Under the pieces are notes generated by a model that did no database searches, was not told the DNA's origin, and saw only the letters and a program-made list of their open reading frames with translations. A stretch of 64,000 nt of DNA, from the NCBI RefSeq assembly GCF_902459465.1, contig NC_047080.1:3782001-3846000 (forward strand). The letters are read 5' to 3'. Below are positions 55,090 through 59,919 of the stretch, one piece after another. The position numbers were made by a program, and so were the translations under genes. Position 1 is the first letter of the stretch. Each line of letters starts with the position of its first letter. The DNA comes from Asterias rubens (taxonomy: Eukaryota).

Positions 55090-55271
55090 AAGATAGAGCG
55101 ATCTAAAGAATGATAAATAGCCAGGACTCGACGAGTCTGGAAACTACACATCAGCGTCAGAACACCGCTGCAAGAAGTCTACCCGTGTACGGAAGCTGAA
55201 AGTTACTCTCATCAACTTCTCGGTGCTTCTTGAGAAAGCCGTCTTTTTTGGCTGACTTGTTTCAGGTGAGT
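55090..55271 (+). promoter_or_regulatory. Candidate promoter and non-coding first exon of the neuropeptide-like gene
   Basis: TATA-like GATAAATAG at about 55092, then a GC-richer stretch ending in a strong donor CAG|GTGAGT at 55265/55266. The next strong acceptor I noticed is at 57861. The linkage is inferred. Confidence 0.5.
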
Positions 55272-55655
55272 TTTTAAAAACTTTCATTCCGTAGTTTGTC
55301 ATATGCTCATCTCATTGTAGAGAGTGTATGTCACTGGGTGCAACAGGCAACCAGCTCAAGGCAATCTGCAAGAAGGTCAAAAAAAAAAAAATCAATTCAT
55401 ATTTCTCATTGTTGTTCATGGGGATCGTGTGAGTAACAGGCTGCCAAAGTGTTCCTTGAGTATGCAGTGCAGTTGGTTGCTTCCAGTCAAGTTACCTGTA
55501 AAAATGCACTGAGTAACATGGCCTTGCATGCTTTAACGTCGCAATCCTGTCACACGGTTCGTCCTGTTTTGTTCTGTAATCTTGTAACGGGCACATCCAC
55601 CACAAGCCTCGGCTTTTTGGATGATGCCTCCATGTGAATGAAGAAATAAATGTTA

Positions 55656-55657
<2 letters not shown>

Positions 55658-55724
<67 letters not shown>

Positions 55725-55737
55725 ATTGATTGATTGA
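55658..55737. repeat. (GATT)n microsatellite
   Basis: Read directly from the sequence. Confidence 0.95.
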
Positions 55738-57886
55738 AAAACTCTGTTTGTTGTGTGCAGTTATGGACGAAGTATAAGTGCTTATTGCAAGTCAGATGTT
55801 TTTAATATCAAGGAAGAGAGAGTGCTTCATAAAATAGAACGCGTTGTCTTTGAATCAGAGTTTAAACTTACACCCTTGTATCAAAGGGGTCCACTATAAT
55901 TAGTGCATTACAAATTGCTGTGGTTTTCTTGGTTTAGGCTACTGAACGACCCTGTCTCATTTTAGTTTGAGTAAAATTTAGTTTGGGCGCAAAATACGAT
56001 GTGAAGTTGAGTTTGAGTCTGCTCTCTTAATTGTATTTGATGAAAAAGTTCCTGCAACGAAAGTTCGTTGCAAAATCTATTTCAAATTTTGCTTTGGGAG
56101 AACTGTCAGCAAAATCGTTGAAAAAGTTGCTGCAACAAAAGCTCACTGCAAAACCTATTTTAATTGAATGTTTTCTTGGGTGATTTCTTTCATTGAAGTA
56201 TTGTTGTTTACAACAAAATCGAGTCACTGCATCTTCACAAACACAACCTTTCATACAAATGCATATCGTGTTCCATTAACCATTCCGCCAATATCCTCCC
56301 CCCTTCCTTATGTTGTGCTAAAAACAAAAAGAAATAGCTTTCATCACAAACGTCTTGAGTGCCGCAAAAATTCTTCAGTGTCTAAAGATTTAATTTCGTA
56401 CGCAAAACAGTTAGAGACTACTCTTGGTTTGGCAGTTGTATTTCTCCAGTGCGATTCCATCCATCAACAGTTCTAATAGTGTTTTAAATTAAACTGTTAC
56501 ACGTGAAATGTGTCTTAAAAGGTGTTCGGGTGCTGAATTTGCAAGTGTTGAAGCATGCAGTTGGCTGCATATTTTGCGCAAATTAAATTGTTATTCGGGA
56601 GAGAATGGCCCCTTGCAGTTCAACAATGGTCTGCCATTTGGGCTCGTTCAGTGCCTCAAAAATGCTTTACACATAGACCATGGAATGAGGTGCATTCTGG
56701 TATACACCTAGCAATCAAGTTTGATCGCTAGCTAGCCCAGCATGCACCTCATTCAACAGTTCGCGCTTGTGCAATGGGTATTTGCGAAAAGGTATATTCA
56801 ATACACTCTGGACCATAATGCCTGCCGGGAATACGATATTTGTCCCCACCCGCAATCAAAACTACTTCCTCTGTGGGACATTCTCGTGTTCTGAACCAAT
56901 AAACAAAATAGCAACTATAATGACGTATTCAAGTTGAATAATTCCCCAAACCTCATTTTTTCCTCGCATTCAATGGCATAATTTTGTGTAATTATTTTCC
57001 CTTTGGAGTACTCAGCGGCCTGCCCTTTGAGAATCAGAATTAGGCGGGATTTCTGATGATCATGCGCCGTGAAGCAACGGCGAGTCTGTGAAAGCCTAGC
57101 AACAGCTTTCAACGAAATCAGACTGCCAGTCATTTTTAATCAAGTTAAAGTATGAAAACCGTTTAGTTTATGAAATATTACTAAATGAAACAAGGGTCCA
57201 TGCATCATCGGTCGTTGACTCAAAGCTTATAGTGACTGTTAAACTTATTTGTATTTAGAGCTTTTGTGCACTAATGCAAAAGTGCCTGTAAATGCACTAT
57301 ACTGGGCGGAATTGAAGTAGGATTCCGGGTTCCATGGGTTCCTAAAGTTCCAGGGGTTCCAATCCAATCCTGGGTCAGGTTGACCCAGAATCTCTGTCAA
57401 CGTGACCCGTACCTTACTTGAAATTTTGACATCTGATCCCGGGATACGAAATGAACCGGTAGAGTGTGATATTCATTGGGCAGGAGAAAGAGGTTCAACC
57501 TCGGACTCTTTCAATCCCGGCACATCCGCAAGTGTGTAAGGGTAGCATGGTGGGTTTCGCCTCTCACCAAGGTGACCCCGGTTCGATTCCCGGCCAGGGC
57601 CATATATTATGTGAGTTGAGTTGTGCGTTGGTTCTCTGCTGTGCCACGAGGGTTGTCCAATTTTCATCTCTGTCGATCTGAGTTCGAATCCTATTTTGGC
57701 CGCTAAAAACTTCATTTTAGGTTAGACGTTTGACGAAAGGAGGGAGACATATTATTTTCATACTCAAACGCTCTATCGACATTTAATTATCCACGCGCTT
57801 ATTATTGTTGTTTGAAACAAACCAAGTGAACATAACCAACTTTTGTATATTCGTTCTATAGATCCCAGAGTCAACATACCTTCAAG

Positions 57887-59919
57887 ATGGCATCCGCCTG
57901 GTTGTGTTTTGCTCTTTGTATCACTGCAGTTATCGTGACGGTGGCGGCTGCGACAGGAGAAGAGACTATCTGGCTAACCTCTGACCTCGAAGATTCCACT
58001 ACATTAGCCTACGATACACAAAGCTACTCAGATCCAGCCCCAAACTCTAATTTCCTGAACGAGCTGAACGAGAAGTTGTTAAAACAGGGGGACTCGGTTC
58101 TCAAATCCATGCAGGCATATTTGTGACCCGCTCTAACGAAATGAGGAATGTCTAGTGAATTTCACATTTGCATATTTCATAATATTCCAAACAAGCAAAT
58201 CTTAATATTTTAAATGAAATAAAAATCAAGATCATACGACCTTCCTGTCTGAACCAATGTGGAATTTTCGACGCCCTTGACGCTTAATTTTACGACCCGT
58301 TTTGGAAAACACAAACTCCATAAAAATTAATTTGAAAAAACGCGACGTCTCACACACTCATTAAAATAATATTAATATTTTTGTTTACGATAATGAAAAC
58401 ATCAATTTTTAACCCCCCGTAGTCAGGCAAACAAAATTACCAAAATGAACAAACAACTCAACGAGAAGTTAGATTATAATGTGTAGACAATTTCACCAAT
58501 AAGTTTGACAATGTTTACCTGAAATTTTAGAGCAATTTGCGTTGATATTTCCAACTTGAAATGCGAGTTTTGTTCCGTCAAGTCAAAACATTGTAAAGAC
58601 AGCTGTCACTCAGCGCATAGCATCAATCCCCACGGGTATACTCGGCTTGAAGACCCGGGAACATTCGCAATTTCCCCGTGCATGTTTCTCATGATTTTAG
58701 CGAAATTTCTTACCCAGCATGAAGTTTAACTGAAAGATTATTCCTTTAACATTCAGAATTATTTTGGTTTGGAACAATTCAACCTTGAAAAACCACAAAA
58801 CAATGATGGAAATTAGACACTGTTTTCCCAACGTTCGATAAACATTCCACTGTTCCATACGTCGTACGTGTAGCAAAGTTTGTGCATGGTACCCGCGCAG
58901 TCTTCGTGTGTACATTGTCGTATTACCAGCGCTGCAACTAGCTATGGCAACAAGACCGGGTCGGGTGATCGGACTCTCACGCTGCATGGATAAACAACGC
59001 CTCGGTCTGTGAGCCATACTAAATCTCGCGACGCGGATTTATGAATGGGAGATGTCATCGCTGATAAAACAGGGTTTGCCTTTGGTGACCTTTGAACCCC
59101 TTTCAGTGTTGACACATGTTTTTGGTGGCTATATTTAGACACCTCTAATCTTTGGCTTTCCAATGGTACTCTTGGTGGCGCTATGCAAGTTGTGTGAAAA
59201 GTTTTGCGACGCTCGCCAAATTTGGTGTTTTCAATGAATGTTCGCTGTCTGTCCCGTGGGATTTGGAACATTTTTGGATAATTACGTCAAGAACATGGCT
59301 CAGAAATCGTCTGTTTTTACATCTTTAGTAATCTTTTGACGAAAAGGTAAGACCATTGTAAGTTTAATCAAGATTTAGGCAACCTAAAAGTGTAGTAATA
59401 AAAAAATTCAAAAATTCAATAATTTTCATTAATTGTTTGTTATGATTATGTTCGGTGTCAAATTACACGAAATGAAACTTTACTAGACATTCCTCATTTC
59501 GTTGGAGCGGGTCACATTTGATGAAGTTTCAGCAACTGGTTTCAGCCGGTTCCAACCCGCAAGAACCGGTTCCCACCACCGGCGAAGCTGGCATCAGGCG
59601 CACGCTAACTGGTGGTGGTGCTACTACAACACCAGATGGTGACCCATCAGAGAAGCGCAGCAGCACCCCACCCATCAGCAAGGACGACATTCTCCGAGAG
59701 ATCATCCGGAGGATACGGGAGGAGGCTGCAGGGTATCCCCTCGAGCTGCCACTCGGTATGAGGTTCATCGAGCAACCACTAGGCACGACTCTCCAGACGT
59801 ACCACAGTGATAGCCCGGAGAAGCGAGACGCTGATCGGGATGCGGTACGAGATGAAATCTTGAGAAGGCTCTTGGAGCTTCAAAGAAGTAGGCTTCCCGG
59901 TATGCGTGCCGGAAAATAA
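57887..59919 (+). CDS. Putative secreted neuropeptide precursor (orphan), about 204 aa in two coding exons; splice junction uncertain
   Basis: The exon starting at 57862 (acceptor ttctatag) encodes a signal peptide (MASAWLCFALCITAVIVTVAAA) and an acidic spacer. The GC-rich ORF 59533-59919 has two EKR cleavage sites and ends ...LPGMRA-GK-stop. The join needs either a GC donor at 58115 or a weak GT donor at 58123. Confidence 0.75.

What the first reader, a model, noticed from the sequence alone, without database searches (positions are those of the whole stretch)
55090..59919. Orphan neuropeptide precursor predicting a 28-residue amidated helical peptide
Seen: a signal peptide, an acidic spacer, an RR site and two KR sites, and a terminal G-K-stop. 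Known: KR cleavage, carboxypeptidase trimming and Gly-dependent amidation would release DADRDAVRDEILRRLLELQRSRLPGMRA-amide (59827-59910) and a 54-residue peptide SSTPPISKDDILREIIRRIREE...SPE. I do not recognise either as a named echinoderm or bilaterian family. Inference: long amphipathic amidated helices are typical ligands of secretin-class GPCRs (CRH/DH44, PTH, calcitonin types), so this may be the ligand of an orphan receptor. It could also be one of the uncharacterised 'np' precursors already listed in echinoderm transcriptomes.
Basis: partly seen in the sequence, partly recalled or inferred. Interest (0 to 1): 0.85.

Follow-up and report, generated by a model that had tools for sequence, protein, structure and literature searches.

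The report
Starfish nerve peptide gene split by transposon
This is a real starfish-only gene for a secreted precursor that probably yields two related nerve peptides, one with an amidated end. What looked like an intron between its two coding pieces is a jumping-gene insertion that breaks the gene in this copy of the genome.

Summary
The sequence features are all present at the stated coordinates in Asterias rubens LOC117303332 (211 aa, "uncharacterized").

**Family.** Only four relatives were found anywhere: A. rubens, A. amurensis, Acanthaster planci and Patiria miniata.
- All four keep both EKR cleavage sites and an invariant LPGMR[A/G]-G-K-stop.
- The two peptide copies are about 45-50% identical between starfish orders. 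The rest of the protein is 12-24% identical.
- The same neighbours flank the gene (a Sec1-family gene upstream, a Ctr copper transporter downstream).

**Nerve expression.** The Acanthaster orthologue (oki.27.137) is listed among proteins found by mass spectrometry in radial nerve cord. It is nerve-enriched (167 and 602 TPM against 11 or less elsewhere). It is unnamed there.

**Known families.** No match to CRH, PDF or any other known family. The secretin-class receptor idea has no support here.

**Gene structure is not as read.**
- The only true intron is 55266-57861, in the 5' UTR.
- The 1.4 kb between the coding pieces is a 1,393-bp transposon (58123-59515) with 34-41-nt inverted ends and an ATTT duplication.
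- It puts a stop after residue 79.
- RNA contigs join the pieces exactly at the duplication (AT..AC, not a splice).
- The same join stands in a DNA run, and the three other species have one unbroken ORF.

The reference haplotype therefore carries a probable null allele. The peptide part is a candidate orphan neuropeptide precursor of a known kind.

The parts
55096..55265 (+). Exon 1, 5' untranslated. The 5' limit is uncertain: one RNA contig starts at 55155, one reaches upstream of 54950.
   Evidence: RNA contigs of runs X5, X13 and X21 (tables 5 and 8).
55266..57861 (+). Intron 1, the only true intron (2,596 nt, GTGAGT...TATAG). It holds a (ATTG)20 microsatellite and three high-copy repeats.
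   Evidence: Joint 55263->57860 'GT..AG (cut +2)' stands in both RNA-like runs and is absent from DNA run X15. Microsatellite.
57862..58122 (+). Exon 2, first part: 25 nt of 5' UTR, then ATG at 57887 and codons 1-78 plus two bases of codon 79.
   Evidence: Matches residues 1-79 of P0001.
57887..57958 (+). Signal peptide (residues 1-24).
   Evidence: Hydrophobic core read directly. The Acanthaster orthologue is scored SignalP 'Y' in PMC9971248 Table S1.
58119..58122 (.). Left copy of the target-site duplication ATTT. The next base, G, is also shared.
   Evidence: 'both = 5'.
58123..59515 (.). Non-autonomous DNA transposon with terminal inverted repeats, 1,393 bp, 38% GC. Inverted ends are 58123-58156(62) and 59482(76)-59515.
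   Evidence: Inverted repeat of 41 nt at 93%; 34-mer ends with 0 and 1 mismatch. No Pfam domain in its ORFs. Depth is tens to hundreds of times the flanks in DNA run X15. Absent at this site in A. amurensis.
58124..58126 (+). In-frame TGA supplied by the transposon's first bases. It ends the reference-haplotype ORF after Leu79, before any predicted peptide.
59516..59519 (.). Right copy of the target-site duplication ATTT.
59520..59919 (+). Exon 2, second part: third base of codon 79 through the stop codon (59917-59919). The 3' UTR runs on to about 60790.
   Evidence: (RNA contigs extend 739-740 nt past 60050).
59653..59658 (+). First conserved K-R cleavage site (residues 124-125, in the context EKR).
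   Evidence: Invariant in four species.
59659..59820 (+). Copy 1 peptide region (residues 126-179). The conserved core is 126-161 and ends LELPLGMRF. There is no amidation signal. In Patiria the core is followed by KK.
   Evidence: 51% identity to Valvatida against 12-24% in spacers.
59821..59826 (+). Second conserved K-R cleavage site (residues 180-181, EKR).
59827..59910 (+). Copy 2 peptide (residues 182-209), predicted ...RLPGMRA-amide. The internal RR at 194-195 could shorten it.
   Evidence: LPGMR is invariant.
59911..59919 (+). Gly (amide donor), Lys (trimmed), stop.
   Evidence: G210 and K211 are invariant in four species.

Best explanation
The gene is Asterias rubens LOC117303332. It encodes a secreted 211-residue precursor found so far only in starfish.

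**Expected processing (inferred).**
- The signal peptide is removed.
- Prohormone convertases cut at two conserved EKR sites.
- This releases two paralogous peptides of about 28-36 residues. Each has a short basic helical stretch followed by a conserved (E)LP(x)GMR(F/A/G) tail.
- The last copy loses its Lys and is amidated from Gly, giving ...LPGMRA-NH2 in Asterias and ...LPGMRG-NH2 in Acanthaster and Patiria.
- The products are most likely neuropeptides made in the radial nerve cord.
- The amidated C-terminal tail is the best-conserved part, so it is probably the part a receptor recognises. The receptor is unknown.

**Gene structure.** The gene has two exons, and the whole coding sequence lies in exon 2.

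**The insertion.**
- In the sequenced haplotype, a 1,393-bp non-autonomous transposon with inverted ends landed in codon 79 and duplicated ATTT.
- Its first bases create a TGA stop.
- This allele cannot make either peptide unless the element is removed.
- Transcripts and the annotated protein come from the uninterrupted allele. That allele exists as DNA in the species.

**Shown:** the transposon anatomy, the empty site in DNA, in RNA and in a sister species, the conservation pattern, and nerve expression and protein detection of the orthologue.

**Inferred:** cleavage, amidation, signalling role and null phenotype.
For: **Transposon**
- 41-nt inverted repeat bounds the gap, with ATTT on both sides.
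- Deleting 58123-59519 restores one ORF of 211 aa, identical to the NCBI protein P0001.
- RNA contigs of 1,643 and 1,899 nt carry the join 58118->59516, 'skips 1397, AT..AC, both 5'.
- DNA run X15 carries the same join. Its left-flank contig stops at the branch base 58123.
- The coding sequence is one continuous ORF in A. amurensis, Acanthaster and Patiria.
- Window-to-A. amurensis alignment breaks exactly at the element.
- Depth over the element is far above the flanks.

**Precursor**
- Only four proteins were found in 1.84 billion representatives and in two profile searches. All are from asteroids and all are 'uncharacterized'.
- EKR, EKR and LPGMRxGK are invariant.
- The two copies align with 6 invariant columns. 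In Patiria, QPVELPIGMRFKK against QPVELPGMRGGK gives E=4e-4.
- Peptide regions are 43-51% identical across orders, against 12-24% elsewhere.
- Between the two Asterias species, pN/pS is 0.005/0.033 in the peptide region and 0.018/0.014 in the spacer (few sites).
- Sec1-gene-Ctr synteny is shown by Pfam in Acanthaster. The other loci show the same gene layout.
- PMC9971248 Table S1 lists oki.27.137 among the proteins identified by mass spectrometry after RP-HPLC of radial nerve cord. SignalP is Y. TPM is 167 (female nerve) and 602 (male nerve), against 0-11 in eight other samples.
- Nearest language-model neighbours are arthropod neuropeptide precursors (score 0.87, a lead only).
Against: - No mature peptide from this precursor has been shown. 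The Acanthaster mass-spectrometry entry identifies the protein, not its processed or amidated ends.
- Tissue of expression in A. rubens itself is unknown, because the runs are coded.
- The gene is absent from the 40 precursors mined from the A. rubens nerve-cord transcriptome.
- RR pairs inside both helices could be cut, so peptide limits are uncertain.
- The DNA evidence for the empty allele in A. rubens rests on one contig with only 25 unique letters on the short side. No read-level view of the filled junction was obtained, so heterozygosity of the reference animal is inferred.
Confidence: 0.72

Rival explanations
1. The peptides are divergent members of an ancient class-B ligand family (CRH/DH44/ELH or PDF type). 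They would act on an orphan secretin-type receptor.
For: - The peptides are 28-36 residues, partly helical in the model, and the last is amidated.
- Two related peptides on one precursor is also the ArPDFP layout.
- Asterias copy 1 begins SSTPPIS, which resembles the start of vertebrate CRH as I recall it.
Against: - No Pfam CRF, PDH or other hormone family hit at E up to 10 for any of four orthologues or for the peptide segments.
- The peptide profile finds no peptide hormone among PDB chains.
- PPIS is not conserved; Valvatida have NLSPTQR.
- Conservation is strongest at the C-terminal tail, and the N-termini differ between orders.
- A. rubens already has separate CRH-type (130 aa) and PDF-type (104 aa) precursors.
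- Amphipathicity is modest.
Confidence: 0.1
2. It is a secreted protein of nerve cells that is not cut into signalling peptides, for example a granin-like helper of secretory granules or a matrix component.
For: - The N-terminal predicted helix (residues 54-90) keeps a few matching residues across orders.
- The mass-spectrometry entry shows only that the protein is present.
- The protein is acidic and predicted to be disordered, like granins.
Against: - Conservation is concentrated exactly between dibasic sites.
- The terminal G-K is invariant over two starfish orders. That is hard to explain without processing and amidation.
Confidence: 0.15
3. The 1,397-nt gap is a genuine but non-canonical intron, removed from pre-mRNA made from the element-bearing allele.
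For: The NCBI model spans it (gene range 2,033 nt, protein 211 aa), and RNA contigs lack it.
Against: - The ends are AT..AC, with no U12-type 5' site (ATTTGTGA rather than ATATCC).
- The boundaries coincide with a target-site duplication and inverted repeats.
- The joined form stands in a DNA run.
- Three related species have no gap.
- No in-frame GT-AG pair exists. Using the GT at 58123 with the AG at 59526 or 59532 shifts the frame (read).
Confidence: 0.03

Closest known systems
Orphan 'np' candidate neuropeptide precursors of echinoderms (for example Arnp21-25 of A. rubens; Semmens et al. 2016, PMC4772807)
   Same: - A signal peptide and dibasic sites that bound one or two related peptides.
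- A C-terminal Gly for amidation.
- No relatives outside echinoderms.
   Different: - It is not among the 40 listed precursors; no 211-residue entry and no sequence match in text or supplement.
- It is longer, has no cysteines, and was found in asteroids only.
- Whether it is one of the ApNp entries of Smith et al. 2017 (J Proteomics) could not be checked, because the paper is not held.
PDF-type precursor ArPDFP (104 aa, two peptides of 35 and 29 residues, one amidated)
   Same: Two paralogous peptides of about 30 residues on one precursor, with only one amidated.
   Different: - No detectable sequence similarity and no Pfam hit.
- Here the amidated copy is the last one.
- The precursor is twice as long.
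- ArPDFP is a separate gene.
CRH / DH44 / ELH family
   Same: Peptide length class, helical tendency, amidated end.
   Different: - No profile match.
- Two copies instead of one.
- The N-terminal motif is not conserved.
- A. rubens has its own CRH-type precursor of 130 aa.
Polymorphic insertions of non-autonomous DNA transposons (MITE-like elements) in coding exons; 'introner' elements
   Same: Terminal inverted repeats, a short target-site duplication, many copies, no transposase, and an empty site in other chromosomes and in the sister species.
   Different: - Unlike introners, it brings no usable pair of splice sites. It starts with GT but has no in-frame AG partner, so it breaks the gene rather than making a new intron.
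- The superfamily was not assigned, and the 4-bp duplication is seen in one copy only.

Membership tests
Neuropeptide / prohormone precursor (general kind) | N-terminal signal peptide | tested here: met
   Hydrophobic N-terminus. The orthologue is scored SignalP Y in PMC9971248 Table S1. No signal-peptide predictor was run on the A. rubens protein.
Neuropeptide / prohormone precursor (general kind) | Conserved mono- or dibasic cleavage sites flanking the conserved peptides | tested here: met
   EKR at 123-125 and 179-181 is invariant in four species. Peptide regions are 43-51% identical against 12-24% for spacers.
Neuropeptide / prohormone precursor (general kind) | Amidation signal (Gly followed by a basic residue or the end) | tested here: met
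   G210-K211-stop is invariant.
Neuropeptide / prohormone precursor (general kind) | Expression in neurons or endocrine cells | tested here: inconclusive
   The Acanthaster orthologue has 167 and 602 TPM in nerve against 11 or less elsewhere, and was found by mass spectrometry in nerve cord. For A. rubens, only transcripts of unknown tissue are available.
Neuropeptide / prohormone precursor (general kind) | Mature processed peptide detected; activity on a receptor | not testable with these tools
   Needs non-tryptic peptidomics and receptor assays.
CRH / DH44 / ELH family | Profile match to the family (Pfam CRF) or to solved CRF/urocortin chains | tested here: not met
   No hit at E up to 10.
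CRH / DH44 / ELH family | Conserved N-terminal activation motif | tested here: not met
   PPIS occurs only in Asterias; Acanthaster and Patiria have NLSPTQR.
PDF-type family | Profile match to the PDH/PDF family | tested here: not met
   No Pfam hit.
Spliceosomal intron (for 58119/23-59515/19) | GT-AG, GC-AG or U12-type AT-AC ends; absent from genomic DNA only as RNA | tested here: not met
   AT..AC ends without a U12 5' site. The joined form is present in DNA run X15 and in three other genomes.
Non-autonomous TIR DNA transposon | Terminal inverted repeats plus target-site duplication | tested here: met
   34-41-nt ends at 93-97%. ATTT on both sides.
Non-autonomous TIR DNA transposon | Multiple copies in the genome and an empty orthologous or allelic site | tested here: met
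   Word depth over the element is about 10,000-110,000 against 100-420 in the flanks in X15. Empty site is seen in X15 and in A. amurensis. No second copy lies in this 64-kb window.
Non-autonomous TIR DNA transposon | Assignment to a superfamily (transposase, typical duplication length) | tested here: inconclusive
   No protein domain in its ORFs. No other copy was retrieved.

The most novel reading that the evidence does not exclude
An undescribed, starfish-specific neuropeptide system. Its ligands would be two paralogous peptides ending (E)LPGMR-x, one of them amidated. A. rubens would carry a naturally segregating transposon knock-out allele of it. Wild animals of three genotypes could then be compared to learn what the peptide does, before any receptor is known.
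Probability: 0.4. Interest if true: 0.55.

Novelty: new member of a known kind. Interest (0 to 1): 0.42.

Why it matters
- Starfish are the main non-chordate deuterostome model for neuropeptide evolution, and their catalogue is treated as nearly complete. This adds a conserved, nerve-enriched candidate that the open literature I could read lists only as 'uncharacterized'.
- It has clear predictions: the exact peptide masses, an amidated end, and two paralogous copies.
- It corrects a gene model. The annotated 'intron' is a transposon insertion with non-splice ends.
- It points to a natural loss-of-function allele that could be genotyped by simple PCR.
- It does not open a long-standing question, and the receptor class remains a guess.

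Tried and rejected
1. **In-frame GT-AG splice across the gap.** None exists. The GT at 58123 with the AG at 59526 or 59532 shifts the frame. CAG|GC...CAG|CAA would be in frame but no RNA contig shows it.
2. **U12 AT-AC intron.** The 5' site does not fit.
3. **Remote homologues.**
   - phmmer against 1.84 billion representatives gave only Asterias and Acanthaster.
   - Profile searches gave only the four asteroid proteins.
   - Nothing was found from other echinoderm classes. Their genomes could not be searched by synteny with these tools.
4. **Known families.**
   - Pfam on the whole proteins and on peptide segments gave only sub-threshold chance hits, CA109-like and DUF5908.
   - The peptide profile against PDB gave only designed TIM barrels and a WH2-like stretch of N-WASP. 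I read these as chance.
5. **Literature.**
   - Peptide strings and accession numbers gave no relevant hit in main texts.
   - Supplements of Semmens 2016, the crinoid, ophiuroid and sea-cucumber papers gave none.
   - Smith et al. 2017 (COTS neuropeptidome) is not held.
6. **Structure.** The AlphaFold model from a 4-sequence alignment has pLDDT 38.8 and is usable only as a helix hint. No fold search was made on it.
7. **Other copies of the transposon.** None in the window, in the A. amurensis locus or in JGI metagenome contigs.
8. **Antimicrobial-peptide reading.** Rejected: net charge is 0 to +4 and expression is nerve-specific.
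Full report
**What is in the sequence**

The region holds two open reading frames on the + strand.
- The first (57887-58126, 79 codons) starts with a hydrophobic signal-like peptide and ends ...SMQAYL-TGA.
- The second (59518-59919) reads LMKFQQLV...EKR-SSTPP...SPEKR-DADRD...LPGMRAGK-stop.

**The gap between the two pieces is a transposon, not an intron**

- The 1.4 kb between the ORFs is bounded by a 41-nt inverted repeat at 93% (58122-58162 and 59476-59516). 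The 34-mer at each end occurs nowhere else in the window.
- ATTT flanks the element on both sides (58119-58122 and 59516-59519).
- Removing 58123-59519 joins the two pieces in frame into a 211-codon ORF.
- That ORF is letter for letter the NCBI protein of Asterias rubens LOC117303332...SMQAYLMKFQQL....
- No GT-AG pair gives this join. Depending on where the cut is placed within the five shared letters, the ends read AT..AC or GT..TT.

**Read evidence**

Contigs from four public runs were laid on 54950-60050.
- Runs X5 and X13 behave as RNA. Each has one long contig (1,643 and 1,899 nt) that skips 55266-57861 with GT..AG ends. DNA run X15 lacks that joint.
- The same contigs skip 1,397 nt from 58118 to 59516 ('AT..AC, both 5').
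- DNA run X15 shows the identical 1,397-nt joint in a 796-nt contig.
- X15's left-flank contig stops at 58123, the last base shared by the filled and empty forms. That is what a branch between two alleles would give.
- X15's contigs carry GATC doublings at GATC sites, so it looks like a Hi-C library. The joint has no GATC and matches the RNA joint to the base, so it is not a ligation artefact.
- Depth over the element is tens to hundreds of times the flanks in X15, and several times the gene's depth in RNA. The element therefore belongs to a multi-copy, transcribed family.

**Comparison with other species**

- In A. amurensis the orthologue (97% identical over the C-terminal query, 95% full length) is one continuous 633-nt ORF. 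The site reads GGCATATTTGATGAAG.
- A window-to-locus alignment breaks exactly at the element.
- Acanthaster planci and Patiria miniata also encode the protein in one continuous ORF.
- In the A. rubens assembly the coding range is 2,033 nt and does not translate straight through.
- The element has no recognisable protein domain.

**Conclusion on gene structure**

The gene has two exons. Exon 1 is untranslated and exon 2 holds the whole coding sequence. The reference haplotype carries a derived insertion of a non-autonomous inverted-repeat transposon in codon 79. Its first bases supply a TGA. This allele cannot make either peptide. Even a GT...AG splice using the element's first GT would shift the frame.

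**What the protein is**

- A full HMMER scan of 1.84 billion representatives and two profile searches found only four proteins: A. rubens, A. amurensis, Acanthaster planci (LOC110976338) and Patiria miniata (LOC119734526). All are about 210 residues, all are 'uncharacterized', and none has a Pfam domain.
- In Acanthaster the flanking genes are a Sec1-family gene on the opposite strand upstream and a Ctr copper-transporter gene downstream. The upstream Sec1 gene is also labelled in A. rubens, and the other loci show the same gene layout.
- Between Asterias (Forcipulatida) and the two Valvatida, identity is 12-24% in the signal peptide, spacers and linker. It is 51% in copy 1 and 43-50% in copy 2.
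- Invariant features are EKR before each copy, the core REI.RR.RE, ELP.G.RF, and the end LPGMR-x-G-K. The RR at 105-106 lies in a stretch missing from the Valvatida.
- The two copies align with each other with six invariant columns. In Patiria, QPVELPIGMRFKK against QPVELPGMRGGK gives E=4e-4. This agrees with the scan's sibling note on an internal duplication.
- Between the two Asterias species the peptide region has 1 non-synonymous and 2 synonymous changes. The spacer has 4 and 1. The numbers are too small for a test, but the direction is as expected.

**Expression evidence from the literature**

Smith et al. 2023 (PMC9971248), Table S1, lists oki.27.137 among soluble proteins identified in crown-of-thorns radial nerve cord by RP-HPLC and mass spectrometry. 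The sequence given there is identical to P0003.
- SignalP: Y.
- No sea-urchin hit and no Pfam domain.
- TPM: female nerve 167, male nerve 602, mouth 11, podia 3.1, spine 2.5, and about 0 in testis, egg, gastrula, oocyte and sensory tentacle.
- The table labels the protein only as uncharacterized.

**Comparison with known families**

- The precursor is not among the 40 A. rubens precursors of Semmens et al. 2016. No 211-residue entry exists there and its supplement has no sequence match.
- A. rubens has separate PDF-type (104 aa) and CRH-type (130 aa) precursors.
- No hit was found in the supplements of the ophiuroid, crinoid or sea-cucumber neuropeptide papers, nor in any main text.
- Pfam gives no hormone family for any orthologue. 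A profile of the six peptide copies finds no peptide hormone among PDB chains.
- The CRH-like start 'PPIS' (a resemblance I recall, not a test) is confined to Asterias.
- Conservation is strongest in the Pro/Gly-containing amidated tail and weakest at the N-termini. In my knowledge of the field this is more typical of ligands recognised by their C-terminus than of class-B ligands. That is an inference.
- Amphipathicity is limited to a core of about 11 residues. It is significant in A. rubens copy 1 (p=0.001) and marginal in copy 2 (p=0.06). In the orthologues only Acanthaster copy 2 reaches p=0.02.
- The AlphaFold model is of low confidence (pLDDT 38.8) with helices at 54-88, 133-148 and 178-202.
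- Language-model neighbours are arthropod neuropeptide precursors at 0.87, which is only a lead.

**Verdict**

- The 'orphan neuropeptide precursor' reading is the best one (about 0.7). It remains a candidate until a processed, amidated peptide is seen.
- The secretin-class receptor idea is unsupported.
- The coding 'intron' is a polymorphic transposon insertion (about 0.9) that makes the reference copy a probable null allele.
- I could not check whether the Acanthaster gene was already given an ApNp number in Smith et al. 2017, which is not held.

Noticed in passing
window 57515-57685 (also 56660-56830 and 55463-55633): Three short stretches inside intron 1 have word depths hundreds to a thousand times the single-copy flanks in DNA run X15 and are abundant in RNA runs. 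The first contains a tRNA-like box (GGTTCGATTCC) but ARAGORN calls no tRNA, so it is probably a tRNA-derived SINE family.
   Followed up: partly
window 55657-55737: (ATTG)20 microsatellite in intron 1, 97% pure. Contigs of all runs break there.
   Followed up: no
run X15 laid on window 55422, 57057, 57860, 59953: DNA contigs carry an extra GATC at GATC sites (GATCGATC), the mark of fill-in ligation. The run is probably a Hi-C library, so its contigs can be chimeric at such sites.
   Followed up: no
window 57956; P0004 residue 149: Coding variants in other A. rubens data. G>A at 57956 (Gly24 to Arg, next to the predicted signal-peptide cut) is fixed in run X13. An ENA contig of 2,136 nt encodes the same protein with Gly149 to Val and an unbroken ORF.
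   Followed up: no
P0003 residues 175-190; P0005 176-191: Copy 2 of the Valvatida peptides (LSASGRAAILAAI...) resembles the WH2 actin-binding motif of N-WASP in a PDB profile search (E=0.065). This is probably chance, since the protein is secreted.
   Followed up: no
window 60778-60790: Both RNA contigs end at a genomic A13 run about 870 nt past the stop codon. An AATAAA lies earlier, near 60506. The true polyadenylation site is therefore unclear.
   Followed up: no
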